DNA of 64,000 bases from Octopus bimaculoides (Eukaryota). The DNA lies in contig NC_068982.1 of NCBI RefSeq assembly GCF_001194135.2, positions 96,902,822-96,966,821 on the forward strand, written 5' to 3'. Shown piece by piece: positions 23,030 through 64,000 of this stretch; position 1 is the first letter of the stretch, and the number at the start of each line of letters is the position of its first letter. The position numbers and the translations under genes are program-made. The notes beneath the pieces are model-generated. The model ran no database searches and was not told where the DNA came from. It was given only the letters and a program-made list of their open reading frames with translations.

Positions 23030-23853
23030 TGTGTGTGTGTTGGTATGTAGTGCAAGGGCTAGTAGCATGTAGAGTGACTGGTAGTGTGGAGTGAAGTGAC
23101 CAGTAGTGTGCAGTGGACAGTGCTTCTGTGTACAGGTGACACATCTTTGAATGTGTGGTGATGGAACTGTTTGTGTGAGCATGTCAATGTGTGGTGATGG
23201 ATATGTTAGCATACCATATCTAGGCTGTTGGACAATTGTTTAATATATTGTGACAAAGCTGTGGTGACATAGTAGGCAGGCTATTTTAGTATTTTAGTAT
23301 GTGGTTTTTTATCCGGTGACAACCAAGCCTTGTATATTCCCTCGCCAAATATATCACTATTTTTGTTGTCATTATCATTAATAATATTAGAGCAATGGAG
23401 ATGGCCGAGGAAGTAGAACCAGATTTCATGTTTTACTGCATTTAGTTTCATTTCTCTGTTCTGAGGCTGACTTTGCCTTTTATTCTCACAGGATTGATAA
23501 AATAAGTACCAGTAATATGCTATATCAATTCAACTGACTTTACCCAACCCATTTTAAAAAATTGGCCTTGTACCTAGTCAAAAGAAAATCATTATTATTA
23601 ATTAATATTTGTATGTTTTTTTTCTTCAATTTTTGTTATTTCATTTTAGACATTGTTCCTTGAATAAAATGGTGATTACTCAAGAGACATATTTCTCAAA
23701 ATGAAAATATTGTTCACCCTAATTGTATTATTTTCGATAAATTGAGAGTTTCATACAAAAGTCTAAAATCTCTTTGCTTTATTTATTTATTTTTGTTTAC
23801 AGTAGTATCACTATTCAGACTCTAAAATTTGTATTGTAGATTGACCATACTTA

Positions 23854-27332: not shown

Positions 27333-27347
27333 CTCTATATATATATC

Positions 27348-27505
27348 TCATCATCATCATTTAACGTCTGCTTTCCATGCTAGCATGGGTTGGACGATTT
27401 GACTGAGGACTGGTGAAACCGGATGGCTACACCAGGCTCCAATCTGATTTGGCAGAGTTTCTACAGCTGGATGCCCTTCCTAACGCCAACCACTCAGAGT
27501 GTAGT
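27348..27505 (-). mobile_element. RTE 3'-tail / SINE-like fragment
   Basis: Near-identical to the tail at 26330-26490. Confidence 0.8.
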
Positions 27506-27693
27506 GTGTATATATATATATATCAAGATGAATACTTATTCTGTAAATTCTGATTTTGTTTTTGATCAAATCTTAACTGCTACAACATTACCGAAAGTAC
27601 ACATATACAGCATTGTTACTTATGCAACCAAGATGCACAACTCTAATATAAATGTTTTTATAGTCTAGTGTTTAAAATGTGACTATTAAACTT

Positions 27694-27699
27694 TTTATT
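27694..27699 (-). promoter_or_regulatory. Candidate polyadenylation signal AATAAA for the BIN3 3' UTR
   Basis: tttatt on + about 1.1 kb past the stop. AT-rich DNA makes chance hexamers common. Confidence 0.3.
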
Positions 27700-28214
27700 T
27701 GTGTTATAATTTTGTTTAATGGCATAAAATTAAAGTCGAAACTGTACACAATGAAATGTTTCTTACCTGTTTAAAAATCCAGATTTGATTAATGAGGATG
27801 GTTAGCATGATGGTGAATATAGACATCATAATAATCCAATTCATTCAACTGATTTTATGAGAAAAATAACATTTAAGCTCAATTATTGTATCACAATATA
27901 AAAATAAACAAAAATAACTCAAATCTGTGCATTTACAATTGCCTTTTAATTTGACTTCTGTAATGTGTTTAATTTAAAGTTGTTTCGGATCTTGGAAGTA
28001 TTCTGAGTATTGGATCAACCTAAAACACCAAGTGGTTCATAAAGGCTGAAGTCAGTATAGTACTATAGTAATAAAGGATTTAGTTCTGAATCCTTAAAAA
28101 ACAGCAGGACCTGTAACATATGCTACAGTTATTACAAAATAAATCCATCACTGATAACATGATGGTCTTCTGATCAAGTCAGTATTTTATTTTTCTCATC
28201 AATGAATACATATT

Positions 28215-28515
28215 TTACAATCTTGAAATCTGCATTTCACAATCTGGGACACGCATCTCATAATCTGGGATACATATTTCAGCATCTGGGGTATGTGCCC
28301 CACAACGTGGGACTCTCATCACACACTCTTGGGCATGCATTTACAACCTAGGATATGCATCACACAATAAGGTGCATGAATTTCAATCTGGCATATATGT
28401 AACAATCAGGGACATGCATTACACAATCTAGCACATGAGTAACAATCTGAGACATGCATCTCACAATCTAGGGCATGCATTACACAATCTGGCACATGTG
28501 GTGCACAATCTGAGG
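28215..28515. repeat. Degenerate ~21-bp minisatellite in the BIN3 3' UTR (about 15 units)
   Basis: Unit like acaatctgggacatgcatctc. The paralogous array at about 57985-58112 has about 7 units. Confidence 0.8.
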
Positions 28516-28833: not shown

Positions 28834-28974
28834 TCAGTCAACTATGGACAATGCCTTTATATCTGAGAGTTTCTGTTGTATTCTGTTGCCATATTCTTCA
28901 CTAGTGTATGTCTCTGGGGCAAGATGGCCAGCTAACTCACTATAGATCTTGTAACATTCAGAGTTGTAGGCAAC
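28834..28974 (-). CDS. BIN3: BIN3 exon 10, coding part (VAYNSECYKIYSELAGHL...KLSDIKALSIVD*)
   Basis: ttttctctacag acceptor, 46 codons plus TGA. KLS...ALSIV.D C-terminus as in BIN3. Confidence 0.95.
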   Translation of the reverse strand, partial: VAYNSECYKIYSELAGHLAPETYTSEEYGNRIQQKLSDIKALSIVD

Positions 28975-29966
28975 CTGTAGAGAAAAGAGAAAAAAAAAGA
29001 GTCAATGATTAAAACCTTCATTATTGATTTCTTTAATCAATAACAGATTTATCCTAATTAAATATCCCCCACTTCCTATAACCTCAGTAGTACTCAGTTC
29101 TCCAACCCAATCACAACTAAGGAGACTATTTAAACATGACAGAGCAACCTCCACTTGACCATCACTCTGTAGTCTTCTGTCTTAATAATCTCCATGAAAA
29201 CACACACTACTTACATTGATGCACATACATACACTGACATATACACACATTAAGACCCTTCCTACACACATAAGGATCAACAAAGAAACCAATGAGGGAG
29301 CCTCTATGCAGTCAAGCAGCTTACTAGTCCTTAATATCTTTAAAAAGAGGGAATGGTCATGGTTAGAATGCTTCTTTGACTGGAGGTCAGGAAGACGAGG
29401 ACTGACATGATGCTGTAAAAAGAATCTACCTCAATGAATTCTGTCTGAGCCATGGAAAAGTGGACATTAAAACAATGATGATGATGATTTTTCAATTGTT
29501 GGCATCATGTGTCAGATGAAACTTCACTGAGGCAGATTTTCTATGGCCAGATACTCTTCCTGTTACCAACCCATACCTGTTTTCCTAGCAGAGTAATACA
29601 AATTACAAATATGTGTGTAATATGTATGCTTAACTGGTACTCATGCCATTGGCATGTAAAAAGCACCCACTACACTCTTGGAATGGTTGGTATTACGAAG
29701 GACATCCAGCTGTAGATTAGATTGGAACCTGGCATAGCCCTAGAGCTTACCAGTTTCAGTCAAACCATTCAACCCATGCCAGCATGGAAAATGGACATTA
29801 AATGATGATGGCTGTATGGTTAAAACGTTTGCTTCCCAATCATATGGTTCTGGGTTCAGTCCCACTGCATGGCACCTCAGGCAAGTGATTCATGCAATAA
29901 CCTTGGATGATTAAAGCTTTGTAAGAGGTTGTAATATGAGGGAGCTGAAAGACCATTGTGTATATA

Positions 29967-30018
<52 letters not shown>

Positions 30019-30377
30019 TATGCTTGCTTCTCCTCGTCTTGAGATTAGATGATAGCTGTAAAGGATTATCACTGTCATACAAGCAATGCCATTCAATTAC
30101 TTTACTGTGTAAACATGTCTGAACATGGGGAAATATTACCTTGCTTGGAAACATGTAAGGGTTGGTTAGAGAAAGGGCCTCCGGCTCTAAAAAACTGCCC
30201 CAACATCTCTCATCTGACCGATGCAAGTATAGAAAATCCAATGTTAAAATAACAACACTGATGTATAAACAACTTGACTCCAGCCTCACCAAATAAGAAA
30301 AAAACTTGATTGCTAGGATACAATACAGTGTGTGTGTGTGTGTGCGTGTGTGTAAAATCTTATAATATGATACCAAC

Positions 30378-30512
30378 CTGAGATTTGATTAATGCTTCAA
30401 TACATGGTTGATAGTAACTAATTCGGAGATCATATAGTTTAGGCATATCTTCCATTAAGATGGTGTGTAGTTCATAGAACTCTTCTTTGGCTGGCGTCAA
30501 GGATTTCTGACT
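30378..30512 (-). CDS. BIN3: BIN3 exon 9 (SQKSLTPAKEEFYELHTILMEDMPKLYDLRISYYQPCIEALIKSQ)
   Basis: tctatcag acceptor, gttggt donor, 135 nt, phase 0-0. L.E.MP..Y..R..Y.QP..E.LI..Q motif. Confidence 0.95.
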
Positions 30513-48325: not shown

Positions 48326-48989
48326 TCAAAAACATAACATACTTACATCTGATTCGGGGAATTCCATGCAATTCTATGAATCATATAATCATCATGGTAT
48401 ATGTTCAGTTTGGTTGGATCAAANNNNNNNNNNNNNNNNNNNNNNNNNNNNNNNNNNNNNNNNNNNNNNNNNNNNNNNNNNNNNNNNNNNNNNNNNNNNN
48501 NNNNNNNNNNNNNNNNNNNNNNNNNNNNNNNNNNNNNNNNNNNNNNNNNNNNNNNNNNNNNNNNNNNNNNNNNNNNNNNNNNNNNNNNNNNNNNNNNNNN
48601 NNNNNNNNNNNNNNNNNNNNNNNNNNNNNNNNNNNNNNNNNNNNNNNNNNNNNNNNNNNNNNNNNNNNNNNNNNNNNNNNNNNNNNNNNNNNNNNNNNNN
48701 NNNNNNNNNNNNNNNNNNNNNNNNNNNNNNNNNNNNNNNNNNNNNNNNNNNNNNNNNNNNNNGGTTAGGGCTTTAGGGCTTTAGTTGGGGGAAAAAAATC
48801 AAAATTGAAGAATTTGGTGGGGAAAGGGTGGGGGAAATTTAACAATGCCATTTTTGGTAATTTTCCGGAATCTCCGTATCCCAAAACGGGGGTTTTGGGC
48901 AAAAATAATTTTGAAAATAAGCAAATTTGGAAGAAAATGGGGTGGGGGCGGGCGGAAGTCTTTCTCGAAACAATCTAAGAGGGAGGAAT

Positions 48990-49215
48990 CGTGGACTATC
49001 ATTCAATTAGGTAAAGCGGGAGACAGCATTCTTCAGTGGTTGGCACGGCGTCGACTAATTATGAATATGTACACCTGTGAAAATTGTAATTCACCATGTG
49101 GCCTTACTACATGAGGTGACGTTACTGATGGGGGTTATGGCACTGCAAGAGTTGTAAAAGAAGCAAATCTATTCGTTACTGTCCATTTTTTGAGAGAAGT
49201 CATATTTCGCCAGTG
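48990..49215 (+). mobile_element. Merlin / IS1595-like (ISXO2-type) transposase N-terminal remnant
   Basis: ILQWLARRRLIMNMYTCENCNSPC...DG.(frameshift)WHCKSCKRSKSIR..PFFERSHIS fits the zinc-ribbon pattern Cx2C...DG..W.Cx2C..KSIR..FF..S. Confidence 0.65.
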
Positions 49216-49328
49216 TTTATGTCGTGTAAAAAGTAGACTTATTTCCCCCTTAATTTTTATTTGCTTTCTTAATCTAACCAAACTGAATCATATATGTCAT
49301 CACCTATCATCATAAATGTAGTTTCCTA

Positions 49329-50072
49329 CTAGCAAATAACCAACCATGCTTTGGATCATTATCACTGGCTATAGCAACGACAACAGTCACTCTCACACTG
49401 CCTCTGTCGTTGTTGTCCCCCGTCAACTATAACTGAGAAGAAATATAATGAAAAGCATTCCATCTCTTCTAAGACGGTAAGGTATAATTTGATGGAGATT
49501 TGGCTACTATTTCTCGCAAGTGAAGACACCATGTAGAGGCTCCCCTCTTTGGTTTGTCAATATGCTTATTACACGAAGTTGGCAATCTGGCAGACACGTT
49601 AGCGCACCGCGCGAAATGCTTAGAGGCATTTCGTCTGCCGTTACGTTCTGAGTTCAAATTCCACCGAGATCGATTTTGCCCGTCATCCTTTCGGGGTCGA
49701 TAAATTAAGTACCAGTTACGAATTGGGGTCGATGTAATCGACTAGTTCCCTCCCTCAAAATTTCAGGCCTTGTGCCTAGAGTAGAAAAGAATACGCTTAT
49801 TACACGAACTAGCAAATAACCATGCTTTGGATCATCCTCACTGGCAACGACGCCAGTCACACCCACACTGCCTCTGGCGTTGTCGTCCTGTCAACCATAA
49901 CTGACCATATGATGAAAAGCATTCCAGCTGTAAGTATTCCATCTCTTCTAAGACGGTAAGGTATAATTTGATGGAAATTTGACTACTATTTCTCGCAAGT
50001 GGAGACACCACATAGAGGCTCACTCTTTGGTTTGTCGGTTTGTCAATATGCATATTACACGACCTAGTAATT
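49329..50072. repeat. Diverged ~250-bp tandem duplication with a SINE at the junction
   Basis: 49329-49577 aligns with 49809-50072 (ctagcaaataacc...ccatctcttctaagacggtaagg...ttattacacga). Confidence 0.85.
49578..49789 (+). mobile_element. tRNA-derived SINE of the same family with 19-bp TSD
   Basis: B box GAGTTCAAATTCC. TSD aata(t/c)gcttattacacgaa at 49559-49577 and 49790-49808. Confidence 0.88.
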
Positions 50073-50631
50073 AGTAATCCCGAAATACATTTATGAAGGT
50101 TTATAAACCGTGAGACCAACGAAGCGCTTGGTGCTGCACAGATGTTTTTTTTTCTGTCTCCCTTTATTTTTGTTTTCTTTTTCTTTCTTTTATATATGTA
50201 CCGTGTACATATATGTTATATATGTAATAAAATCTGTAGTTAGGCGCTATTTTTCACTTTGTTCTTTCTCAACAAACTTTCAGGTCCGGTGATGCGCGTG
50301 CAGTCGTAAGTGTGTATGTAATTAAAAAGAAGTCATGCTGATATTTCTAGCAGGTCAGACAACCACAAAAAAGCTTATTCTTTAAATCGAAAATAGTTTT
50401 GGCATATAAAAAGAAGCCAACGCAAATTAAAAGTTAAGGTATAATACACATCAAAGCATGTAAATTCTACTAACGATACTATTTCCCTTACGTGTACATT
50501 ACCTTATTGGTTGCTACCAAGCGAAACAACAAATCTTAGCTTACTTGAAAATCAATGAAAAATATACAAAAAAGAGGAAATCAATTATACATATTATATT
50601 AAAAAAATGTAGGCCATATTTTAATCATTCA

Positions 50632-50675
<44 letters not shown>

Positions 50676-51572
50676 TACTACTAAAGCAGCACGGTCCCGA
50701 ACGCGCANNNNNNNNNNTATATATATATATATATGTCTATGTACCTGAAGATATGTAAAAATTACTAATTGATCGTGTCTTCATTTCTGTCCGTCGTCCT
50801 GACAAACACAACAGTACAATAGTACTTTCACTTACATCTGAATTTCGTGGCAACGCTAACCCATTCTTTAATAAAGAGAAATTCGCATAACTGTAGCTGC
50901 CCATGTGTGTGTGTATTATGAAATGATAGAAAAACAGTGGATGTTTAATTCAGTTAATCTCTGTCGATATAGTTTACAGTAATTCATTAACTATATGTAT
51001 TTACAACTCGTGCCCACTAGTAAAATGAATAACCAACATAAAGGCATCTCAGCTGAAATGAAAACGAAAAAAGCTAAAGTGCTCTTTATCACTTTTGACA
51101 AGTACTGGAATATTTCTGAAACACACAGTACCATTTCGTTTGGGCTAGGGTTAAAATAAGTCAAGATGTATAATAAACAGGTATGAAATTATGTATACAC
51201 ATAATTATAAATCTTTATATACATCATATACAAATAAAATATACGTGAAAACCTATTTTCATAAGTTTTCATTTTGTCAATGAAGCTAATCCTTACTTTT
51301 TTTTTTATTCTGAAGGTCCAATAAATAACATCGATGTCACCTTAATGAACGAAAGCCAGTGCATTTCCTACAGGAAAAGAGCAAGGAAGAGGAAAATTCG
51401 AAATATATTTTCCCCTTCCGTATGACAAACCAATTTAGGTTCTAGTATTTAGGTAGGCGTTACAATATTACGAGTATTTTGCTTTGTTTTTTTTTTCTTA
51501 TTTAATGTGAAATGAATAGTTATAAAACGATTTAATTGCTATAACATAATACAGAATAAATAAAATATTTAC

Positions 51573-51580
51573 TTGCTCAT
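51573..51580 (-). CDS. BIN3: BIN3 coding exon 1 (ATG AGC AA)
   Basis: ATGAGCAA|gtaaat. The 8-nt phase-2 end fits exon 2, and the length matches the 8-nt first coding exon I recall for vertebrate BIN3. Confidence 0.75.
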
Positions 51581-52315
51581 TTTCTGGTATTATATCCCCA
51601 ACCACATCAATTGACGATGTTAATGGATAGATAACTCTTCTGCCAATGGTTCTGGGAGGGAGGTACGCGTACCTATCATCTTTAATTGATATTCCGCGTT
51701 ACTGTTTCAAACATCTGGCAAAACCTAAACGTCACAAAATTCTCTGCGTTCCTCTTTCTTTCCTTTTTTCTTTGTCAGAACCAATCAAATGCCTGAAGAA
51801 ACAAAGAAACAATTCACCATTACGAACGAAGTATAACCCCCACCCAACCGTACCAAATATCTATTTTGTATTTATACCATTGGAGTTAACAAAAAAGAAA
51901 ACCGAAAAACAACTATACATTCTGGATAGGATGGAGCTGGTAGCAACTTAGGCACTATCATGCTATTAGCTGTCAGAAGTGAAAGTGCTCACTGCTAGTG
52001 AAGTATCTGTCTGTCTGCCTGCATGCCTGTTGCTGGCCTGTCGATTCTTTCGGTTAAGTTTATTATGAACATCTATAACGGTGTGAAGCATTAAAAACTC
52101 AATTTGAAATATTTATGCAGGGAAAAGGGTTAAAAAATATTAGCAAGTACAGGAGACAGTTATGTTTCAGTATGATTATGATCTCATCAGCGGACTTTGT
52201 CATTCATATTTCCAGTCAGAGTATCTGCTAGATACTGGAATCGATTTAGTTGATTATATTTCTCGATTCAAACCTATCTGATTAAATCAACAATACGATT
52301 CTCACATACACACGG

Positions 52316-52358
<43 letters not shown>

Positions 52359-52368
52359 NNNNNNNNNN

Positions 52369-52407
<39 letters not shown>

Positions 52408-54366
52408 CATACGCATATATATCAACATGTCAACAATGCTTGCTTGGTTCGAACGGAACAGACAAGGTCTTGTTACTCTCCTCATCACCTAGCTCATACA
52501 CCAGTAAAGAAACTCGATCAAGTCTGTGTTTTGGGTATGTTTCTTTTTGGTGGCTGTATGGCGTTCCTATGACTAATTACTTCACAGAGTGGCTGGTTTC
52601 ATTTTATGATATCACCAGCGCTAAAGAAAATGTTTGTAGAGTTCTCTCTTAACTTGTCTGAAGGTTCTTTCTCTCTTTCTTTTTTTACTTCTTCTTTCTT
52701 TCTGTCTTTTTGCACAGTTATTGTAATAAACAAGTTGCATTTGCTTAGACTTTGGTATACTCTGCTCAGTATACTCTTTGACATGTTAGCGAGTATGTGC
52801 GATAGACGACACCAGGCGAACTGTCAAGGGACAAGCAGTCAGCCAGTAGTTAACTTGCGCCAGTCAAGCAGCCAACATAAGCAGTCGCGGAACATAAACA
52901 GACACGACCGAATGACCAACACACACACAGACACAAAACATACTAGTTCTACCTCATCACATCCACACAGTATTTCCCCTGTTTATTTTCAACTTCGCCA
53001 ACTCAAAGCAATTTGGTAATGTCATGTAGTGAAGTTTCTGGTGTATACAACACATAAATGCAAGTGTCGATTAAATAAATTATTTAAACCACAATCCGAT
53101 GCTTTCCTATTGTTTTACTTTGATGTCATCCACATGCCTATTTCATCTGCTACCTCAACGGCATCTTTTGCTACACCATCCCACTACAGCTGTTATGAAA
53201 CTAAATTTATAATGTTGTATAAATGATATGGATGTATGTATGTATGCATGGTCGGGTTGTCGGCGACTAAACTGGCAATCCCATCAAGCTTGCTTGGTAA
53301 GGAGTTGATTGTTGGACACCCTGCAGGACGAAAAATAAGACCTGTCAAAGGGCGGAAGAGCTCATGAGCCATCTGACTATGTGTACATGTGTATGTATGC
53401 ATGTATGTATGCATAGGGACATGGAAATACCTGGGTTGGTGTCCAGGCACGTGGTTGGCCCACTGGGAACGGGAGGCTCCTCTCTTGTTGTCACATGTCT
53501 GTAGGAGAGGGACACTCCAAGAGAAAACCTGCAACATGGACAATATTTGATGATGTTGGTAAGTTCTTTTCGAGTTTATGTTGTCCATGTTCAGAGAATA
53601 GGATTGGATTTGTGCAAATCCTTTCCCCACTATAAAAAAAAAATCATCATGCACGGCTGGTCGTAGCCTTCGTATGTGTGGGACTTTCGATCAGGCATTG
53701 GCAATACTCGAACACAAGTTTGCAGCCATCATCTAGGTAGGTAGGTGCAGTATGGCTGAATGTTTAAGGAGTTGGTTTCAAAACAACTCGGTCTCCGTAC
53801 AATTGCATGGGGTCTTGGACGAGTGGTATTGTTTATTTGAAACTTTGTCACATGGGTTCTGCCTGAGTATCACATTAGACGTGTGCGTGTATGTCTTTTT
53901 CTTCTTTTTGCTTATTAACATTCTCTCTAGAATAAGAGAACCGGTTTTGAATACAGTAACAAAAGCCCCATTACTGCAGTTTGGATATTAATAACTGTTA
54001 CATCTCTATATTTAAGAAAGTCTTGTGTATTTTTACTATCCCACATACAGATAGTATTTATAAAGTTTGTCATTTTCTTTTTTTACTTGAAAATCTTAGC
54101 TCCTCCAAATTGTGGCTAAGGCATTTACTAACGTAGCCAAATGCATCAGTGATTATTGATATGATTGTAAATTATAATCAGAGTAGAAGAGTTGCAAATT
54201 TCAAAACAGTTTTCTATAAATTTTCTCTTTCTTGCTGATTTTGGAAGATATGTTTACATTTCAGTGGCAACTAATCTTTTTTTCCGTCGCACATCACTTT
54301 GTCAGGTTTGTTGTCTGTACCTGATTGAAGTTTTGATAGGAATGTTCCACCAACATTCCCTGTGCT

Positions 54367-56050
54367 TAGGGTTGCCAACCATCCTTTATTTCAAAGGACA
54401 GTCCTTTATTCAGCTCTATTTGTCTTTGTCCTTTATTGGGATTTGAAATGACACTATTTGTCCTTTATTTTGAAATCGTTTTGACTGCTAGTTCAATTTC
54501 CTGCTCTCAAGATGTGATTGCAAAAGCATTTACTTCTTGTAAGAGTTCAGACTCTGTCAACTCTGTAGTCTGCACAATATTAGAAGCACAGAGCAGCAGA
54601 CCAGGGTGTAAAATTAGCCTCATTTTATGTATAACTCAATTCTCCATTTAAAAAAAAAAGGCATTCATTTTGGGAAAATGAGAAAATCGTAAACTATGTT
54701 ACTAAATATGAGAATCACCATCAAGAAAAAAGAAAAGAAAAAACAACAGAGAAAGAAAAGAAAGAAAGGAAGTGCCATTGAACGTTTGGAAAGGTAATAC
54801 CTCCGCCTGAACTGAACTGAGACTCATGAAGAAGAAGAACCAAAACAAATATGGCATATTATACAACAAGGTAGTGATGAGGCCCTTCACAAAATTGAGA
54901 CATAATTTGTTATAAATACCAGGAGAACAGTGAAATCTATGTGAGAAAACCTGTAATAGTAATGCCAATATTTCATGTTATTATCAGATAACAATATTAA
55001 TTGAAAGTGTGTTTTTGAGACATGATAATTTTTACATTGTTACAAGAATGTACTGATTAGGCCCAACTATTCAAGTGCTAGCATTTTGATATCAGTTCAC
55101 ATTTCAAGTTATGTGCATTTTAGATACATGCTTGTTGGGCCATATAGTATCTTTTTGCTTAATATTGTCATGAATGGTGAAAAATTACGATTAGTAATTA
55201 TTATTTTCAAATTCAATACATCTAGTGACATCATCGTGAGCCTGTGAGGCCCAGTGCTTGTTCAGTTAGATGCTAGTTCTCTTGCACCCCACACTAAATG
55301 GCCAAGAACTAGGCTAGAGAATAGTTCTTTAAGTTAATTTCAGGAGTTTGAAGTTATAAGAAATTCTGGGCTTTATGCACTAGCATAATTTGCTTTTTCA
55401 GAAGCTAAATAGACCTACCATAGCCTAAGCTATATTCACATTATTTGAAATAGCTTCTAACAGTGTCTGTGTGAGTGTGCAGATATGATTGATCATTGAC
55501 TTTTTCTTGACCTGCTTGAAGTGCATGCATTGACTCTAGACCTTGTTTCACAACATATATTTTATTTCAATGCTAAATCAATTATTTTCTTTCACAGGGT
55601 TTTAATACATTAGTAAGGCGGGACTACAGTGACTGCTTAATATTTTGTAGTCATGGAACCCTCAGTGAAAAAGAATAGATTGTGCTCATATAACAAAGAT
55701 TAGGAAAAGGAGTATGAATGGTTGGCAGCAACTAATAATCCACAAGAGGCAAAGTGCATTATTTATAATAGTACCTTTAAAATTGGCTATATGGGTGTTG
55801 TAGCTTTCAAACAACATAAAACTTCTGATAGTCATAAAAGTAACTGCAATGCTTCAGCTTCCAAATAAATTTTTCGTAAAAGTCAGTACAAAAGAAGATA
55901 ATGTAATTGCTCCAGAAGTAGCTCAAATATATCATGCAGTTAAACACAATCATTCATACAACACCCTTGATTGTAGCTTGAAATTGAATTCAGAACAGGG
56001 TTCCAAAGTAGCTGGAAAGATATCTTTTACTGAATTATGTAAAATGTGCG
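54367..56050 (+). mobile_element. Degenerate hAT-like DNA transposon (left end and transposase N-terminus)
   Basis: TAGGGTTGCCAAC TIR-like end at 54367. 55654-56000 reads KKNRLCSYNKD*EKEYEWL...AKC...TFKIG..G..AFKQH and EVAQIYHAVKHNHSYNTLDCSLKL. No right TIR found. Confidence 0.55.
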
Positions 56051-56259
56051 TTTTGCAATTAGCTTTAATAACACTGTCATTTAGTGCATTATCTGCACTA
56101 AAACATGAAACTCTTTCTCAGTCAAGTTACAAATTGTCCATAGTAACTTTGGAGGAGCTAGAGCCTGTGAATGTTACTGTTTATGTGGAAATTTGCTGTC
56201 AATGTCAGAATCTTGCAGGTTTTTATATCTATGGAGTGGATTTCTTATATAGATCACGT

Positions 56260-57590
56260 TGTAACGATACAGAATTAAATGTACTTAGTTTCACATTGTT
56301 AAATATGCTGTCGCAGATAAAAGGTGGTCAGCTCAGTGGCTGGCACGGATGGCAATTGAATGGATAACCAACCACTCTGCATTGAGTTATTGTAGTGTGT
56401 GCATGGCACAATATGGTGACAGCAGTAAAACAAGATAAATATATCAAATCGAAACTAATCGCATTACCAGCACATTATTATCATTAGACATTGTTCAACA
56501 GTGTAGACTCAATATATACATTCGAATGTAGCAGGGACCAACTGACCTTTAATCACTGTTTGTATGCTGTTGTGTCCACTACTCTGATTGGTTGGTATTG
56601 GCGCAATTTGTCTCCTACTCTGTTGTGCCAACTGACCGCAGATAGCCAGTTAGAGAGCACCATTTTCAAACTCTGTTTCGAGCTTACTACTTTCTATAAA
56701 GACCCAGCTTTTTTCTCAATACATGTCTTTGGTTCCTGACCTTTTAAGGTCAAACAACTGACCACATAGACACAGCCAGTTCCAGCAACCACATTGAAAC
56801 TTTCCAACTTTGTCCAACAGCGTTACGGAAAATTGATGAGACAATTGATGACTTTGTTACAAGAGCCCGAATGATAGCAAAAAAATATTCTTCATCACCA
56901 TCACCATCTTCTTAATGTTGTCAACATCATCTCTCTACGTACAGAGCTCAGCAAGCAACTTGCCCAGGTTCTAACACCTCTTTGTTCATGAATTACCTCA
57001 CCATGGATCAACAGCAAACATACAACCTGCAAGAACTCCTGTACCAAGTGAACCAGGCTGCAGCATCACAGCTATGACTTCACGTTTGGCATGTACCTGC
57101 AGCCAGCTCATCTTCATGGCCACAACTTCTTGATACATTACAGCTATTGTACAATATGGCAAACCTGTGGCATTTGCATTGAAAGCCCTTGACAAAACTG
57201 AGTCAAACTACCCAAACATTGATCATGAAATGCTGGCTGTGGTATTTGGAATCACCCGTTTCCACACATACCTTTATAGACATCCATTTGAAGTCATCAC
57301 AGGCCACAAACCCCTGGAGGTGATCACAGAAAAACCCTCCTTCGAGCACCACCCCAACTACAAAGGCTGCTCCAGAAAATTCAGGGATGCGATTTCAAAA
57401 TCAAATACCGCCCAGGGCATACTATGACATTGACTGACACTCTCTTGTCAGTTCAAACCACATGATAGCCAACATGTGACCCTGAGAAGGTTACCTAATT
57501 GCTGGTTTCAGTTTGTGACAAACTTTCTAATCATATCAAATCCGTGGTTGTTGTAATTAACAGTTGGAAGACATTCTACTGTAAATATAA
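56260..57590 (+). mobile_element. Ty3/Gypsy LTR retrotransposon remnant (putative 5' LTR, PBS, gag and RNase H fragments)
   Basis: TGTAACG...GGCACA (56260-56410) followed by PBS-like TGGTGACAGCAG (56414). Gag ETIDDFVTRARMIAKK. RNase H KPVAFA.KALDKTESNYPNIDHEMLAVVFGITRFHTYLY...EVITGHKPLE, then KYRPG..M...DTLS. Confidence 0.8.
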
Positions 57591-58395
57591 TCTGATTCAT
57601 TCAACTTATCTTATGAGAAAAATAACAATTAAGCTCAATTATTGTATGATGAGTTTAATGTATCAAAATAGAAAAATAAAACAAAAATAACCCAAATCTG
57701 CACGTTTACCATTGCCTTTTAATTTGACTTCTGTAATTTGTTTAATTTAAAGTTGTTTGGGATCTTGGAAGTATTCTGAGTATTGGATCAACCTAAAACA
57801 CCCAGTGGTTTGTAAAGGTTGAAGGCAGTCTAGTACTGTAATAATAAAAGATTTAGTTCTGAATCCTTAAAAAAGCAGGGCCTGCAACATATGCTGCAAT
57901 TACTACAAGATAAATCCATCACTGATAACATGATAGCCTTCAGATTATGTCAATATTATTTTTCTCATCAACGAATACATATTTCACAATCTTGGAACCT
58001 GCATTTCGCAATCTGGGACATTCATCTCATAATCTAGCACATGAATAACAATCTAAGATATACATCTAACAATCTAGGACATGCATTACAGAATCTGGCA
58101 CATGAATCTGAGGCATTTATTTCTACAGTATCATATTTCACAGGATGACATTTCATGATAAAAGTAATGTGATGACATTTATGAAACAACAAAATATTAC
58201 AATCAATGTGTAGAACAATGTTTGTTATTGAGTCACTCCAGTAGTTAGTAGTTTGCCAAATTTAAAGTAGTCCAATGTTTAAAATGGATTTCTTCAGTGG
58301 ACTTCATATGAATAAACTTCATTCATTACATAAAACAGTATTTGATTTTTTTCCCCCTCATATAAAATCTCTTTTTGATTTAATATTGATTAATA

Positions 58396-58548
58396 TTAAG
58401 TAACTAATGAGTCAACTATGGACAATGCCTTTATATCTGAGAGTTTCTGTTGTATTCTGTTGCCATATTCTTCACTAGTGAACGTGTCTGGGTTAAGATG
58501 GCCAGCTAACTCACTATAGATCTTGTAACATTCAGAGTTGTAGGCAAC
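58396..58548 (-). pseudogene. BIN3: Duplicate BIN3 exon 10' (open frame, stop TGA changed to TCA, extended by SLVT*)
   Basis: Acceptor intact. Identical to exon 10 except LAPETY to LNPDTF and the stop codon. New TAA at 58396-58398. Confidence 0.85.
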
Positions 58549-60041
58549 CTGTAGAGAAAAGAGAAAAAAAAAGAGTCAATGATTAAAACCTTCATTATTG
58601 ATTTCTTTAATCAATAACAGATTTATCCTAATTAAATATCCCCCCACTTCCTATAACCTCAGTAGTACTCAGTTCTCCAACCCAGTCACAACTAAGGAGA
58701 CTATCTAATCACAACAGAGCAACCTCCACTTGACCATCACTCTGTAGTCTTCTGTCTTAATAATCTCCATGAAAACACACCACTTACATTGACGCACATA
58801 CATACACTGACATATACACACAAAGATCAACAAAGAAACCAATGAGGGAGCCTCTATGCAGTCAAGCAGCTCACTAGTCCTTAATATCTTTGAAAAGAGG
58901 GAATGGTCATGGTTAGAATGCTTCTTTGACTGGAGGTCAGGAAGACGAGGACTGACATGATGCTGTAAAAAGAATCTACCTCAATGAATTCTGTCTGAGC
59001 CATGCAAGCATGGAAAAGTGGACATTAAAACAAAGATGATGATGATGATTTTTCAATTGTTGGCATCATGGGTCAGATGAAACTTCACTGAGGCAGATTT
59101 TCTATGGCCAGATACTCTTCCTGTTACCAACCCATACCTGTTTTCCAAGCAGAGTAATAGAAGTTATGGGTTGGTAACAGGAAGAGTATCTGGCCATAGA
59201 AAATTTGCCTCAGTGAAGTTTTCCAAGCAGAGTAATACAAATTACAAATATATGTGTAATATATATGCTTAACTGGTACCCATGCCATTGGCACATAAAA
59301 ATCACCCACTACACTGTTGAAATGGTTGGCGTTAGGAAGGGTCTCCAACCATAGAAACCATGCCAAATCAGATTGGAACCTGGCATAGCCCTAGAGCTTA
59401 CCGGTTTCAGTCAAATCGTCCAACCCATGGAAAATGGACGTTAAATGATGATGATGATGATGATAATGATGGCTGTGTGGTTAAGACGTTTGCTTCCCAA
59501 TCATATAGTTCTGGGTTCAGTCCCACTGCATGGCACCTCAGGCAAGTGATTTATACAATAGCCTTGGATGATTAAAGCCTTGTGAGAAGGTGTAATAGGA
59601 GGAAATTGAAAGAAGCCCATTATGTGTGTGTGTGCGTGTGCGTGCGCACATGTGCACACGCATATGCATGTATGTATGTTTGTTTCTCCTAGTCTTGAGA
59701 TCACATGATAGACGTAAAGGATTATCACTGTCATGCAATTACTTTTCTGTGAAAACATGTCTGACCATGGGGAAATATTACCTTGTTTAGAAACATGTGA
59801 GTGTTGTTGACAGGAAGGGCATCCAGCTCTAAAAATCTGTCTCAACATCTCTCATCTGACCCATTCAAGTATAGAAAAGCCATTGTTAAAATGACAACAA
59901 TGATGTATAAACAACTTGACTCCAAATTGCATTACTTGACATAACTCCAGCCCCACTAAAAAAGAAAAAAAAAATTCATTGCTTGGATACAGTACATTGT
60001 GTATGTGTGTGTGTGTTAAACTCTTATAATATGAAACCAAC

Positions 60042-60176
60042 CTGAGATTTGATTAATGCTTCAATACATGATTGAGGGTAACTAATTTGGAGATCATATA
60101 GTTTAGACATATCTTCCATTAAGATTGTGTGTAGTTCATAGCACTTTCCTTTGGCTGGCGTCAAGGATTTCTGGCT
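60042..60176 (-). pseudogene. BIN3: Duplicate BIN3 exon 9' (open frame, AG/GT intact, 7 amino-acid changes)
   Basis: SQKSLTPAKGKCYELHTILMEDMSKLYDLQISYPQSCIEALIKSQ. 10 nt differences in 135 (2 synonymous, 8 non-synonymous). Confidence 0.85.
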
Positions 60177-60236
60177 CTGAAAGAATTAAAAAAAAAAAAA
60201 AACCCCAGAATAATCACTCATTTAAAAGACAAAGTA

Positions 60237-62808
60237 TTGGGGCATCCCATAAATAATGTGGTTTTTTTCAATTGCATGAACTAAAAGTCGTAGGGAGATG
60301 GGATAAGCGACTTGCATCAACTTGCTATAAAAGCAGGTAGTAATTCTTAGTGCAGATTTTGAAGAGTCATCATCATCATCGTCGTTTAACGTCCGCTTTC
60401 CATGCTAGCATGGGTTGGACGATTTGACTGAGGACTGGTGAAACCGGATGGCTACACCAGGCTCCAATCTGATTTGGCAGAGTTTCTACAGCTGGATGCC
60501 CTTCCTAACGCCAACCACTCAGAGAGTGTAGTGGGTGCCTTTACGTGTCACCCGCACGAAGGCCAGTCAGGCGGTACTGGCAACGGCCACACTCAAAATG
60601 GTGCATTTCATGTGCCACTCGCACAANNNNNNNNNNNNNNNNNNNNNNNNNNNNNNNNNNNNNNNNNNNNNNNNNNNNNNNNNNNNNNNNNNNNNNNNNN
60701 NNNNNNNNNNNNNNNNNNNNNNNNNNNNNNNNNNNNNNNNNNNNNNNNNNNNNNNNNNNNNNNNNNNNNNNNNNNNNNNNNNNNNNNNNNNNNNNNNNNN
60801 NNNNNNNNNNNNNNNNNNNNNNNNNNNNNNNNNNNNNNNNNNNNNNNNNNNNNNNNNNNNNNNNNNNNNNNNNNNNNNNNNNNNNNNNNNNNNNNNNNNN
60901 NNNNNNNNNNNNNNNNNNNNNNNNNNNNNNNNNNNNNNNNNNNNNNNNNNNNNNNNNNNNNNNNNNNNNNNNNNNNNNNNNNNNNNNNNNNNNNNNNNNN
61001 NNNNNNNNNNNNNNNNNNNNNNNNNNNNNNNNNNNNNNNNNNNNNNNNNNNNNNNNNNNNNNNNNNNNNNNNNNNNNNNNNNNNNNNNNNNNNNNNNNNN
61101 NNNNNNNNNNNNNNNNNNNNNNNNNNNNNNNNNNNNNNNNNNNNNNNNNNNNNNNNNNNNNNNNNNNNNNNNNNNNNNNNNNNNNNNNNNNNNNNNNNNN
61201 NNNNNNNNNNNNNNNNNNNNNNNNNNNNNNNNNNNNNNNNNNNNNNNNNNNNNNNNNNNNNNNNNNNNNNNNNNNNNNNNNNNNNNNNNNNNNNNNNNNN
61301 NNNNNNNNNNNNNNNNNNNNNNNNNNNNNNNNNNNNNNNNNNNNNNNNNNNNNNNNNNNNNNNNNNNNNNNNNNNNNNNNNNNNNNNNNNNNNNNNNNNN
61401 NNNNNNNNNNNNNNNNNNNNNNNNNNNNNNNNNNNNNNNNNNNNNNNNNNNNNNNNNNNNNNNNNNNNNNNNATCTCGCTCGAAAATCCTACAACGGCCC
61501 CGCACAAAAGCCAGTTCAGGAGCACTGGTAACGATCTCGCTCGAAAGATTTCATGTGTCGCCCGTACATGAGCCAGTCCAGGGGCACCGGCAACGATCTC
61601 GCTCGAAAATCCTACAACGGCCCCGCACAAAAGCCAGTTCAGGGGCACTGGCAACGATCTCGCTCGAAAGATTTCATGTGTCGCCCGTACATGAGCCAGT
61701 CCAAGGGCACCGGCAACGATCTCGCTCGAAAATCCTACGACGGCCCTGCACAAGAGCCGTTTCAAAGCTATAATGAAAGTGAGAAAGGAACATATTTAGT
61801 ATGTTTTGCCTTATGAGTTCAATAAAGGCAACAACGTAATGGAAAGTGCGAGGAATATTAATGCAATATATGGGGATCGGACAATAAGTGTAAACAAGTG
61901 TCACCAGTGGTTCTAGAAATTCCGAGCTGGAAATTACAGTCTAGAAGACAAATTTCGTCCTGGAAGATGTGTAGAGCTCGACAATGGCGTCCTGCAAACC
62001 CTGGTGGAACTAAATCCCATTATAACTGCCATTGGAAAAGTCAGCAAATTGGGTCAATGGGTTCATCACAAACTTTCCAAGTTTAATTGCACACAAAGAG
62101 TGAATGTGTGCTCTTCGTTGCTGTCACATTTCACGAATGAACCCTTTTTTGGACCCTAATAGTGACTGGTGATGAGAAATGGGTTTTCTATAAAATTGTC
62201 AAGCACCGAAGACAGTGGGTAGGTAAAGGAGAAACAATGGCACCCCAAGCTGAAGAAGGTCTTCACCCACATAAGGTGTTGTTATCTGTTTTGTGGGATA
62301 CGAAAGGTTTAGTCCACTTTGAACTTTTAAACTCAAACCAAATGATAACAAAGGAGATCTACCATGAGCAGCTTGAGCGGCTTAAGTCAGCGTTAGAAGG
62401 AAGATGGCCACTTTTGGTTTCAAGATGAAAGGTGTTCTTCCATCAGGATAATGCTTGGCCACATACAATAAGGATGACTTTCCAAAGGCTGGAGCAGTTT
62501 GAATGGGACATGATGCTCCACCTACCATATTTGCCAGACATTGCCCTGTCTGATTATCATTTATACTGTAGTCTTCAAAATTATTTGGACAGGAAAAATA
62601 TGAATTCTGTAGATGATGTCTACTGGAGGAGTATTTTTCATCACAGACAAGTGAATTTTGGAAGAGGGGTCTTGCAAGCCTACTAGATAGTTGGAAGAGC
62701 ATTGTAGAAAATGAAGGAGTATATTTTAGATTAAAAAAGAACTTTGTCTATCTTAATTTTGAAAAATAAAAGAAGCATAAAAATCACATTATTTATAGGA
62801 TGACCCAG
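60237..62808 (+). mobile_element. Mariner (DD34D-type) transposon with TIRs and TA TSD, transposase disrupted
   Basis: 24-bp TIRs 60237-60260 / 62785-62808 (21/24 match), TA at 60235-60236 and 62809-62810. Transposase from ATG 61773: HTH ...QWF*KFRAGNYSLED..RPGR, VTGDEKWVFY, FHQDNAWPH, PYLPDIALSDYHLY. Confidence 0.93.
60367..61758 (-). mobile_element. RTE 3'-UTR-derived insert inside the mariner, containing a 123-bp tandem array
   Basis: (GAT)n tail and GGAAGGGCATCCAGC module at 60367-60540. Gap 60627-61472. ATCTCGCTCGAAAATCC recurs at 61473, 61596 and 61719. Confidence 0.85.
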
Positions 62809-63053
62809 TATATACAGAGCGTCTAAAGATAAAAAGAAATTAGTATTGTAGCGTACACTTGATAAATTTTTATTATGATCACTATGGATCGGATACAAAG
62901 ATGTGTACAATACAGGACAAACAAATAAACAAAATGTATGAGTTCTATGATCTTTTAAAAAATTTACGATTGTCTTTATATAAAATTTAAAATTCGTATG
63001 TTCATTGACTTTTTTTTCTCCTTTTAAATATACCGACAAACATATGCCTAAAT

Positions 63054-63110
<57 letters not shown>

Positions 63111-63344
63111 NNNNNNNNNNNNNNNNNNNNNNNNNNNNNNNNNNNNNNNNNNNNNNNNNNNNNNNNNNNNNNNNNNNNNNNNNNNNNNNNNNNNNNNNNN
63201 NNNNNNNNNNNNNNNNNNNNNNNNNNNNNNNNNNNNNNNNNNNNNNNNNNNNNNNNNNNNNNNNNNNNNNNNNNNNNNNNNNNNNNNNNNNNNNNNNNNN
63301 NNNNNNNNNACCCCCACCTACACACACCCACCTACACACATGTA

Positions 63345-64000
63345 TATATATTATAAAATAAAACGATTGGGTTTTTCAACCCGGCAGCCTATAAGGCCCA
63401 GTAGCTCGCCTTCTATTTGCTCGATGATTAGTTAGGGTGACTCACACCCACCTTTTTCACCACTTCCTTCGATCTCTGTTCATATACTTTAGCTGACAGG
63501 GTTCTCTTTTCCAGCCCTATCTTGCTCTTCAGATGGTATTTGAAGTAAGTCAGCAATCCAGGGCCGGATATGTAGGACCCTGTCACAAAACCTTCCATTC
63601 TTGTCCTCCATATGCACTCTTTCAACACTGCTACCGTACAGAAAAAGCAAGCCTCACCTTCCTTTGAGAGTCCAGTTGGCGATATCATCTTTATCATAGA
63701 CTCAGCTGACAGCTGTAATCGTCCCAGATGCGACAACACGTGTTCTACATAAATTATCAAGCTGGAGAGCTGCCGACAATGTACAAAAGCGTGTTGGACA
63801 GTTTCACTGTCCTGCTCGCATCTTGGACATGTCGGTGGCACTGCTAAACCGTGCCTGGATAACTTCTCGCGAACAGGTAGAGCATTCCTGTAACACTGCC
63901 AAGTCAGAGATTTTTGGAAATTATCCAAGTACTCCGACTTGAAGGTTTTACGAAACAGGTTGGTAAGTTGGTTCTCGTCGAACCCCAGAGCCTCTCCTAG
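63345..64000 (-). mobile_element. L1/Tx1-clade LINE 3' end (zf-RVT-like cysteine-rich domain), runs off the window
   Basis: ALPVREKLSRHG...TCPRCEQDSETVQHAFVHC and ECIWRTR, followed by a short 3' UTR. Confidence 0.85.

What the first reader, a model, noticed from the sequence alone, without database searches (positions are those of the whole stretch)
57450..62840. A second BIN3 3' end upstream of BIN3 with both exons still open and spliceable
Seen: a same-strand copy of exons 9 and 10, with their intron and the 3' UTR, lies 6-11 kb upstream of the BIN3 start. Both exons keep their length (135 and 141 nt), AG/GT sites and open frames. The stop changed from TGA to TCA, adding SLVT. Exon 9' has 8 non-synonymous and 2 synonymous changes, which looks neutral, while exon 10' is about 96% identical. 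Inference: this is either a dead partial duplicate or the 3' end of a tandem BIN3 paralogue or chimeric gene whose 5' exons lie beyond position 64000. Its transcription would also run toward the BIN3 promoter.
Basis: partly seen in the sequence, partly recalled or inferred. Interest (0 to 1): 0.7.

Follow-up and report, generated by a model that had tools for sequence, protein, structure and literature searches.

The report
Tail of a tandem BIN3 paralogue
The "second BIN3 3' end" is real, but it is the last two exons of a complete, already annotated tandem copy of the BIN3 gene (BIN3-like) in Octopus bimaculoides, whose other exons lie just past the window edge; the copy changes its protein sequence about as fast as, or faster than, neutral DNA.

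Summary
Exon 9' (60176-60042) and exon 10' (58548-58396) lie on the minus strand. Both are open, keep their AG/GT sites, and the stop changed TGA>TCA, adding SLVT.

It is not a dead fragment. The window is O. bimaculoides CM046602.1. Public models XP_014770144.1 and A0A0L8HSJ3 contain exactly these two exons, including the SLVT tail. Exons 4'-8' were found beyond position 64000, with exon 8' about 8.3 kb past the window edge. O. vulgaris and O. sinensis have the same BIN3-like > BIN3 tandem, so this is neither a haplotig nor an assembly artefact.

The N gap sits in an O. bimaculoides-specific SINE and tandem-array insertion inside a mariner in intron 8'. Its flanks are collinear with gap-free orthologues, and no exon is touched.

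BIN3-like shows no amino-acid constraint. Substitution counts (S, N) are 3,25 and 4,39 on its two branches, against 4,0 and 5,2 for BIN3. In exon 9 they are 21 N and 0 S.

A block of about 1.1 kb (58131-59250) was homogenised with BIN3 by gene conversion.

Whether BIN3-like is a fast-adapting gene or an early pseudogene is open. Interest is low to moderate.

The parts
57450..58395 (-). 3' UTR and 3' flank of BIN3-like, homologous to the BIN3 3' region. The duplicated block ends at 57450. It contains a 21-bp minisatellite with 6 copies at 57981-58104, against 13.8 copies in the parent at 28231-28512.
58396..58548 (-). Exon 10' coding sequence (50 codons plus TAA). The former stop position is now TCA at 58410-58408. 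The new stop TAA is at 58398-58396, adding SLVT.
   Evidence: The translation is identical to the C-terminus of XP_014770144.1 and A0A0L8HSJ3.
58549..60041 (-). Intron 9', with no assembly gap.
58131..59250 (.). Gene-conversion tract between BIN3-like and BIN3. The within-species paralogues differ by 3.2% here (1.9% in the intron part), against 5.9-6.5% between orthologues. No 'orthology' sites are left in this block.
59080..59221 (.). Copy-specific inverted duplication in intron 9', with 60-nt arms that are 97% complementary and 22 nt apart. The parent lacks the 78 extra bases.
59932..59955 (-). Alternative terminal coding exon (WGWSYVK*) used by model A0A0L8HR63. It follows an AG acceptor that the parent lacks.
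60042..60176 (-). Exon 9' (45 codons, phase 0/0), flanked by AG and GT.
   Evidence: It matches A0A0L8HR63, A0A0L8HSJ3 and XP_014770144.1 exactly.
60177..64000 (-). The 3' part of intron 8'. The whole intron is about 12.1 kb in this species, and exon 8' lies about 8.3 kb beyond the window end. Parent-like sequence is seen at 60177-60236 and about 62811-62880.
60237..62808 (+). Degenerate mariner (Mos1-type) element with 32-nt TIRs and a TA target-site duplication (60235-36 and 62809-10). It is shared with O. vulgaris and O. sinensis BIN3-like and is absent from BIN3.
60367..61758 (.). O. bimaculoides-specific insertion inside the mariner: a SINE-like repeat (60367-60626), the N gap (60627-61472) and a 123-bp tandem array (61473-61758).
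63340..64000 (-). 3' end of a LINE (C-terminus of the reverse transcriptase, zf-RVT) inserted in intron 8'. It runs off the window and is absent from O. vulgaris at this place. It is preceded by (CA)n(TA)n and the gap 63111-63309.
57141..57449 (+). Truncated LTR-retrotransposon RT/RNase H fragment. It forms the intergenic border of the duplicated block and is conserved in O. vulgaris and O. sinensis.
28834..30512 (-). Parent BIN3 exon 9 (30512-30378), intron 9 and exon 10 (28974-28834, stop TGA).
51573..51580 (-). BIN3 start codon and first coding exon (ATGAGCAA). Exon 2 is at 46477-46429.

Best explanation
Window 57450-64000 is the 3' end of BIN3-like, a complete ten-exon tandem paralogue of bridging integrator 3 in Octopus bimaculoides. 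The stretch holds part of intron 8', exon 9', intron 9', exon 10' and the 3' UTR. BIN3-like lies head-to-tail 5.9 kb upstream of BIN3.

The paralogue arose from a whole-gene DNA-level duplication running from about 0.8 kb upstream of the ATG to the 3' flank. That is about 24 kb in O. vulgaris coordinates. The duplication happened before the O. bimaculoides / O. vulgaris-sinensis split, at roughly 1.8 times the age of that split.

Since then three things have happened:
1. Its introns took up a mariner (shared with the other two species), and in O. bimaculoides also a SINE, a tandem array and a LINE.
2. About 1.1 kb around exon 10' was homogenised with BIN3 by gene conversion.
3. Its protein sequence has evolved with no detectable BAR-type constraint (omega of 1 or more), while BIN3 is strongly constrained (omega 0.04).

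Shown here: the gene's identity, extent, orthology and rates, and the conversion tract. Inferred: it is still expressed as a protein. My leaning is about 55:40 that it is a fast-evolving functional BAR paralogue rather than an early pseudogene.
For: Identity and extent:
- L003 (GCA_001194135.2, CM046602.1) is 100% identical to window 48763-64000, with the same gaps. Upstream of exon 9' it carries exons 4' (5597), 5' (9963), 6' (12655), 7' (13920) and 8' (15460).
- XP_014770144.1 (183 aa) and A0A0L8HSJ3 (249 aa) contain the exon 9' and 10' peptides exactly, including SLVT.
- The parent is BIN3: Pfam BAR E=9.6e-18, and it equals XP_052834453.1 / XP_014770140.1 over exons 2-10.

Orthology:
- O. 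vulgaris L001 and O. sinensis L002 show BIN3-like with ten exons and AG/GT sites directly upstream of BIN3. They are collinear with window 20060-62862 and share the mariner and the retroelement fragment.

Age:
- In distal intron 9 the paralogues differ by 14.3-14.4% in all four pairings, against 7.6-8.6% for orthologues. There are 38 orthology-type informative sites against 12 and 4 of the other two types.

Gene conversion:
- The block 58131-59250 is 1.9-3.2% divergent within the species against 5.9-6.5% between species.

Rates:
- BIN3 O. bimaculoides vs O. sinensis: dN 0.005, dS 0.115.
- Branch counts over exons 4-10, as [S,N]: BIN3-like 3,25 (O. bimaculoides), 4,39 (O. vulgaris), stem 2,5. 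BIN3: 4,0 and 5,2.
- The excess of N over the neutral expectation has P 0.0005-0.03, depending on kappa.
- In exon 9 the BIN3-like orthologues differ by 21 N and 0 S. This is above the adjacent intron rate (Fisher P=0.001).
Against: No transcript or protein evidence could be examined here. The database models are predictions.

Several observations fit decay as well as adaptation:
- The amino-acid changes fall at random with respect to deep conservation. Eight of 33 in O. bimaculoides and 9 of 50 in O. vulgaris hit sites that are at least 90% invariant, where 18% of sites are such. In O. bimaculoides they remove F166, P178, R184, Y188 and P190 of exon 9.
- O. bimaculoides has lost the canonical acceptor of exon 6' (AG>AC) and the original stop codon.
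- Measured against the intron rate rather than the low synonymous counts, dN is only about 1.2-1.8 times neutral.

Exons 1'-3' of the O. bimaculoides gene were not located in L003, which has gaps and a limited flank. They are known only from the UniProt models.
Confidence: 0.9

Rival explanations
1. BIN3-like is a functional, positively selected BAR-domain paralogue. Its changes, concentrated in exon 9 (helix 3 of the BAR domain), are adaptive. One possibility is that they alter dimer partner choice or membrane binding relative to BIN3. This is a sub-hypothesis of the best explanation.
For: - N:S is 69:9 on the BIN3-like branches, against a neutral expectation of 2.6-3.9:1 (P 0.0005-0.03).
- Exon 9 has 21 N and 0 S, and an N rate 2.3 times the adjacent intron rate (P=0.001).
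- There are no stops and no indels in the coding sequence: exons 2-10 in O. vulgaris and exons 4-10 in O. bimaculoides. Non-coding DNA shows about 0.09 indels per substitution.
- All 18 splice dinucleotide sites of exons 3-10 are kept in O. vulgaris.
- The gene is annotated in three species.
Against: - Synonymous counts are tiny (3, 4, 2), and synonymous divergence is lower than intron divergence.
- Replacements ignore deep conservation.
- O. bimaculoides lost an acceptor and the stop codon.
- No expression data are available.
- The analysis is a parsimony count, not a likelihood codon model.
Confidence: 0.5
2. BIN3-like is a young, unprocessed, full-length pseudogene, or is becoming one in O. 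bimaculoides. It drifts neutrally, and its frames are open only because too little time has passed and because gene conversion from BIN3 patches it.
For: - dN is about equal to the intron rate (1.2-1.8 times).
- Changes are random with respect to conservation and hit invariant residues.
- The exon 6' acceptor is lost (AG>AC) and the models use a cryptic AG 18 nt downstream.
- The stop codon is lost.
- Intron 8' is swollen to about 12.1 kb by transposable elements.
- A gene-conversion tract covers exon 10'.
- The two window exons on their own stay open by chance with P about 0.16.
Against: - The N:S excess is above the neutral expectation, which a pseudogene should not show.
- There is no frameshift or stop in about 660-740 nt in either lineage, despite 28-56 substitutions.
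- Both 'defects' in O. bimaculoides happen to be in frame.
Confidence: 0.4
3. It is a dead partial duplicate: only exons 9-10 and the UTR were copied.
For: - Inside the window no copy of exons 1-8 exists.
- Homology to the parent intron 8 fades about 70 bp beyond the mariner and is not significant further on.
Against: - Exons 4'-8' are present upstream in the same assembly.
- The whole gene is present in O. vulgaris.
- The loss of homology is explained by insertions of transposable elements in intron 8'.
Confidence: 0.01
4. It is an assembly artefact: an allelic haplotig of BIN3 scaffolded in tandem, or a collapsed or duplicated region.
For: The region is rich in gaps, with two in 57450-64000. 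The block 58517-58667 is 100% identical to the parent.
Against: - Most of the copy is 8-16% divergent from the parent, with about 25 indels and different transposable-element content.
- The same tandem arrangement, with the same mariner, is found in two independent chromosome-level assemblies of other species.
Confidence: 0.01
5. It is a chimeric gene: exons 9' and 10' are spliced to 5' exons of an unrelated gene, or are driven by the upstream LINE.
For: A LINE lies in the same orientation at 63340-64000.
Against: The upstream exons are BIN3-derived in the public models and in L003. There is no poly(A) or retrocopy hallmark, and the introns are retained.
Confidence: 0.02

Closest known systems
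BIN3 (bridging integrator 3; BAR-only member of the amphiphysin/BIN family; from general knowledge, the homologue of yeast Rvs161/Hob3)
   Same: The exon-intron structure is the same: ten exons with the same exon lengths and phases for exons 3-10. It is a BAR-only protein of about 250 aa. It is 79-83% identical to octopus BIN3. Pfam BAR hits the full-length model.
   Different: BIN3-like has about 26% amino-acid divergence between O. bimaculoides and O. vulgaris, against 1.2% for BIN3. Residues invariant from molluscs to echinoderms are replaced. In O. bimaculoides exon 6' is shortened by 18 nt and the C-terminus is extended by SLVT.
RefSeq and UniProt models of O. bimaculoides BIN3-like (XP_014770144.1, A0A0L8HSJ3, A0A0L8HR63), and of O. 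vulgaris (CAI9717246.1) and O. sinensis (XP_036356654.1)
   Same: These models are the feature itself. The exon 9' and exon 10' peptides are identical to the window translation.
   Different: The databases give only predicted models. They carry no statement on the duplication history, the rate of evolution, the gene conversion or the lost acceptor.
Young tandem gene duplicates with asymmetric acceleration and gene conversion (general class, from general knowledge; examples are globin and opsin clusters)
   Same: One copy is conserved and the other accelerated. The two lie in the same orientation about 30 kb apart. A conversion tract makes the paralogues within a species more alike than the orthologues between species.
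   Different: Here the accelerated copy shows no residual purifying selection at all (omega of 1 or more) while keeping an intact frame in two lineages.
Unprocessed (duplicated) pseudogene
   Same: There is no amino-acid constraint. A splice acceptor and the stop codon have been lost in O. bimaculoides.
   Different: No frameshift or premature stop was found in exons 4'-10'. The N:S ratio exceeds the neutral expectation.

Membership tests
BIN3 / BAR-domain family | A BAR domain (Pfam PF03114) above the gathering score | tested here: met
   Parent: 65.1 bits against a cut-off of 28.5. The full BIN3-like model XP_014770144.1 carries a precomputed PF03114 hit. The two window exons alone score 19.3 bits, below the cut-off, as expected for a third of a domain.
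BIN3 / BAR-domain family | BAR-only architecture (about 250 aa, no SH3 domain) and closest named relatives being BIN3 | tested here: met
   The models are 249-251 aa. The best hits are named 'bridging integrator 3(-like)' in molluscs, a brachiopod and echinoderms.
BIN3 / BAR-domain family | Conservation of family-invariant residues, indicating retained BAR function | tested here: not met
   Eight of 33 changes in O. bimaculoides and 9 of 50 in O. vulgaris fall on sites at least 90% invariant. This is no avoidance of conserved sites (P=0.16 and 0.08).
Whole-gene tandem duplicate (paralogue) | All exons are duplicated, in the same orientation, next to the parent, with introns retained | tested here: met
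   Exons 4'-10' are in L003 and the window. Exons 2-10 are in O. vulgaris, with paralogous introns 80-91% identical to the window BIN3. Exons 1'-3' of O. bimaculoides are known only from protein models.
Whole-gene tandem duplicate (paralogue) | Presence at the orthologous position in related species | tested here: met
   O. vulgaris OX597815.1 and O. sinensis CM016860.1 are collinear with the window and share the mariner.
Unprocessed pseudogene | A disabling mutation (frameshift or premature stop) | tested here: not met
   None in exons 4'-10' of O. bimaculoides or exons 2-10 of O. vulgaris. The exon 6' acceptor loss and the stop loss are both rescued in frame.
Unprocessed pseudogene | Neutral substitution pattern (omega about 1) | tested here: inconclusive
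   Omega is 2.0-2.4 against synonymous sites and 1.2-1.8 against the intron rate. The counts are small.
Unprocessed pseudogene | Lack of expression | not testable with these tools
   No RNA-seq data are available here. The protein collection holds no transcript-derived (Logan) entry for either BIN3-like or BIN3 of this species, so that absence is uninformative.
Processed retrocopy / LINE 3' transduction | Loss of introns, a poly(A) tail and target-site duplications | tested here: not met
   Intron 9' is retained. There is no poly(A) at the 57450 border. The whole gene, with its promoter region, is duplicated.
Non-allelic gene conversion tract | Paralogues within a species are more similar than orthologues between species, in a bounded block flanked by the opposite pattern | tested here: met
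   Block 58131-59250: 0.032 (intron part 0.019) against 0.059-0.065. Distal intron 9: 0.144 against 0.076-0.086. Site patterns switch from X to Y.
mariner/Tc1 DNA transposon (the element holding the gap) | Terminal inverted repeats, a TA target duplication, and HTH plus DDE transposase domains | tested here: met
   32-nt TIRs, 88% complementary. TA is present on both sides, against a single TA in the parent. HTH_48 E=3e-16 and Transposase_1 E=2e-19, with stops and frameshifts.

The most novel reading that the evidence does not exclude
BIN3-like is an octopod-lineage BAR-domain gene under recurrent positive selection, with helix 3 (exon 9) as the hot spot: 21 non-synonymous and 0 synonymous differences between two species. 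It may act as a modified dimer partner of BIN3 rather than as a conventional curvature sensor. The exon 6' shortening, the alternative terminal exon and the SLVT tail in O. bimaculoides would then be part of that remodelling rather than decay.
Probability: 0.35. Interest if true: 0.45.

Novelty: already known. Interest (0 to 1): 0.22.

Why it matters
For genome annotation, it settles that this stretch is coding sequence of an annotated gene. It is not a stray pseudo-fragment or a scaffolding error, and the assembly gap is harmless.

Biologically, it is a clean small example of an asymmetric young tandem duplicate. BIN3 is almost frozen (omega 0.04). Its neighbour has lost all BAR-type constraint yet keeps an open frame in two lineages, with a gene-conversion tract linking the two genes.

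If the excess of amino-acid change reflects selection, octopuses would have a lineage-specific, fast-evolving membrane and cytoskeleton adaptor worth a functional look. If not, it is a snapshot of the first steps of pseudogenisation. Either way the matter is of local rather than general importance.

Tried and rejected
1. The first protein search, with the 95-aa copy peptide, found nothing. This was a limit of the word index, not a true absence. The full-length parent query succeeded.
2. The search of protein representatives refuses spliced proteins, so it was not used.
3. My first guess for BIN3 exon 1 (MHWLSFIK, 51364-51341) was wrong. The annotated proteins show the ATG at 51580 (ATGAGCAA) and exon 2 at 46477-46429.
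4. From the window alone I first leaned towards a roughly 3-kb dead fragment. Homology to parent intron 8 fades near 62880, no exon 1-8 copy is in the window, and exon 9' looked neutral. Searches overturned this. The fading is due to transposable-element insertions in a swollen intron 8'.
5. I considered LINE 3' transduction by the same-strand LINE at 63340-64000, and a Helitron-type capture. Both were rejected. The introns are retained, there is no poly(A), the whole gene and its promoter are copied, and the LINE is absent from O. vulgaris.
6. The Rfam scan of 57000-64000 found nothing at gathering score, so the high-identity intron block is not a known RNA.
7. A literature search for 'Octopus' plus 'BIN3' returned three papers, none of them relevant.
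8. One script call returned no answer and was repeated.

Full report
**1. What is in the sequence.** The window is a repeat-rich metazoan locus of 26-47% GC in 2-kb windows.

A BAR-only gene lies on the minus strand. Its exons were mapped by tblastn and by eye:
- exon 10 at 28974-28834;
- exon 9 at 30512-30378;
- further exons at about 32.3, 33.2, 34.8, 36.5, 38.1, 41.6 and 46.4 kb;
- the ATG at 51580.

The assembled protein hits Pfam BAR (E=9.6e-18) and amphiphysin BAR structures. Over exons 2-10 it is identical to 'bridging integrator 3' of Octopus bimaculoides (XP_052834453.1 and XP_014770140.1).

Self-BLAST shows a same-strand duplicate of its 3' end at 57450-60236, 80-90% identical in non-coding parts. 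Exon 9' is at 60176-60042 and exon 10' at 58548-58396.
- Both keep their length and their AG/GT sites, and both are open.
- Exon 9' has 10 nucleotide differences from exon 9, 8 non-synonymous and 2 synonymous.
- Exon 10' has 6 differences.
- The stop TGA has become TCA, and the frame ends four codons later, adding SLVT.

All statements of the observation are confirmed.

**2. The gap.** Homology to the parent breaks at 60236/60237. There a degenerate mariner begins:
- 32-nt terminal inverted repeats at 60235-60266 and 62779-62810;
- a TA duplication where the parent has one TA;
- HTH_48 and Transposase_1 domains, with stops.

Homology resumes after the mariner for about 70 bp.

Inside the mariner sits a SINE-like repeat, which has at least 6 copies in the window. 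It is followed by the N run at 60627-61472 and then a 123-bp tandem array.

In gap-free O. vulgaris DNA, the two mariner parts that flank this insertion are only 26 bp apart. The gap therefore hides only species-specific repeat inside intron 8'. Its flanks belong together. Exon 9', intron 9' and exon 10' are one uninterrupted stretch.

**3. What it is.** Inside the window there is no copy of exons 1-8, and intron-8 homology is lost beyond about 62880. Taken alone, this suggested a dead fragment.

External data overturn that reading. A search with the full parent protein returned four informative hits:
- O. sinensis BIN3, 98% identical;
- a 'bridging integrator 3-like' protein of O. vulgaris, 79% identical;
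- a BIN3 from another cephalopod;
- an O. bimaculoides protein (A0A0L8HR63) that contains the exon 9' peptide exactly, with all seven of its private substitutions, preceded by diverged versions of exons 1-8.

Its cluster mates A0A0L8HSJ3 (249 aa) and XP_014770144.1 (183 aa) continue through exon 10' and end in ...SIVDSLVT.

The genomic locus of XP_014770144.1 (L003, GCA_001194135.2, CM046602.1) is 100% identical to window 48763-64000, including the same gaps. The window is therefore that assembly. Window position w corresponds to about w+96,902,821 in the record.

L003 carries exons 4', 5', 6', 7' and 8' upstream. Exon 8' lies about 8.3 kb beyond position 64000. Intron 8' is about 12.1 kb and is swollen by the mariner, the SINE and tandem array, a LINE (zf-RVT, 63340-64000) and several gaps.

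O. vulgaris (L001) and O. sinensis (L002) have a ten-exon BIN3-like gene directly upstream of BIN3. Both loci are collinear with the window and share the mariner and the truncated retroelement at the border. The paralogy extends through all introns and about 0.8 kb upstream of the ATG.

The feature is thus the tail of a whole-gene tandem duplicate. A haplotig, a retrocopy and a chimera are all excluded.

**4. History.** In distal intron 9 the paralogues differ by 14.3-14.4% in every pairing, while orthologues differ by 7.6-8.6%. Informative sites there overwhelmingly group BIN3 with BIN3 and BIN3-like with BIN3-like. The duplication therefore predates the species split, by roughly 0.8 split-times.

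A block at 58131-59250 shows the opposite pattern. The two O. bimaculoides copies differ by 3.2% (1.9% in the intron part), against 5.9-6.5% between species, and no orthology-type sites remain. This is a gene-conversion tract covering exon 10' and the adjoining intron and UTR.

Within that tract exon 10' stands out. It has five substitutions clustered in 15 bp, plus the stop change. All five amino-acid-level changes, including the stop loss, are derived on the BIN3-like lineage.

**5. Mode of evolution.** BIN3 is strongly constrained: dN 0.005, dS 0.115, omega 0.04 between O. bimaculoides and O. sinensis.

Parsimony counts over exons 4-10, given as [S,N]:

| Branch | S | N |
|---|---|---|
| BIN3, O. 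bimaculoides | 4 | 0 |
| BIN3, O. sinensis | 5 | 2 |
| BIN3-like, O. bimaculoides | 3 | 25 |
| BIN3-like, O. vulgaris | 4 | 39 |
| BIN3-like, shared stem | 2 | 5 |

Synonymous change is clock-like across all four lineages. Non-synonymous change is more than 10-fold higher in BIN3-like.
- The N:S ratio of 69:9 exceeds the neutral expectation of 2.6-3.9:1 (P=0.0005-0.03, depending on the transition bias assumed; kappa is about 4 in the flanking non-coding DNA).
- In exon 9 the two BIN3-like orthologues differ by 21 non-synonymous and 0 synonymous changes. That rate is 2.3 times the rate in the adjacent intron (Fisher P=0.001).

The replacements do not avoid deeply conserved positions. In O. bimaculoides exon 9' they remove F166, P178, R184, Y188 and P190. 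P178 and R184 are conserved even in amphiphysin.

O. bimaculoides has also lost the canonical acceptor of exon 6' (AG>AC). All models use a cryptic AG 18 nt downstream, in frame, which deletes NSNIQK.

No frameshift or premature stop occurs in about 660-740 nt in either lineage, although non-coding DNA shows about 0.09 indels per substitution.

For the two window exons alone, staying open is unremarkable (P about 0.16).

**6. Interpretation.** The structural identity is near certain. The functional state is inferred.

The N:S excess and the intact frames in two lineages favour a still-coding, rapidly and perhaps adaptively evolving BAR paralogue (about 0.5-0.55). The randomness of the changes, the lost acceptor and the lost stop fit an early unprocessed pseudogene, at least in O. 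bimaculoides (about 0.4).

From general knowledge, BAR proteins act as dimers, and the yeast BIN3 homologue Rvs161 works as a heterodimer. A diverged paralogue could therefore act through altered dimerisation. This is speculation.

**7. Novelty.** The gene and exactly these exons are already in RefSeq and UniProt. No paper in the held library discusses octopus BIN3. The rate asymmetry, the conversion tract and the acceptor loss are small new observations.

Interest is low to moderate.

Noticed in passing
window 59080-59221: A copy-specific inverted duplication in intron 9'. Its 60-nt arms are 97% complementary and 22 nt apart. The parent lacks the 78 extra bases. It looks like a template-switch event and would form a long hairpin in the pre-mRNA.
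   Followed up: partly
L003 12650-12680 (outside the window, O. bimaculoides BIN3-like exon 6'): The canonical acceptor AG of exon 6' is mutated to AC (GATAG|AATTCC in O. vulgaris, GATAC AATTAC in O. bimaculoides). The public models use a cryptic AG 18 nt downstream, which deletes NSNIQK in frame.
   Followed up: partly
window 58480-58494 (exon 10'): Five substitutions are clustered within 15 bp (A>N, E>D, T syn, Y>F) inside a tract that is otherwise 98-100% identical to the parent. This could be a complex mutation, a micro-conversion or local selection.
   Followed up: partly
window 28231-28512 and 57981-58104: A 21-bp minisatellite (consensus TGCATTACACAATCTGGGACA) in the 3' UTR has 13.8 copies in BIN3 and 6 in BIN3-like.
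   Followed up: partly
window 22970-27830: A 4.86-kb block downstream of BIN3, holding SINEs, microsatellites and the gap 26550-27145, has no counterpart in the BIN3-like 3' flank. O. sinensis BIN3 has it too. It is therefore either an old insertion in the parent or an old deletion in the copy.
   Followed up: partly
window 59932-59955: An alternative terminal exon (WGWSYVK*) is used by UniProt model A0A0L8HR63. Its acceptor and part of its sequence are specific to the copy: the parent lacks 25 bp there and has no AG.
   Followed up: partly
window 57141-57449: A truncated LTR-retrotransposon RT/RNase H fragment on the plus strand ends exactly at the border of the duplicated block. It is conserved in O. 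vulgaris and O. sinensis. It may mark the duplication breakpoint.
   Followed up: partly
window about 1-20500 (by collinearity with L002 42012-43293): In O. sinensis, the next gene downstream of BIN3 on the opposite strand encodes a 746-aa protein with PRELI, CRAL_TRIO_N and CRAL_TRIO domains. Its orthologue should occupy the left part of the window.
   Followed up: no
window 60367-60626 and 19284-19730, 26317-26517, 27348-27509, 16108-16316, 59281-59470: A SINE-like repeat of about 200-260 bp is present in many copies, 75-98% identical, some very young. One copy carries a 123-bp tandem array at its tail, and that array causes the assembly gap.
   Followed up: partly
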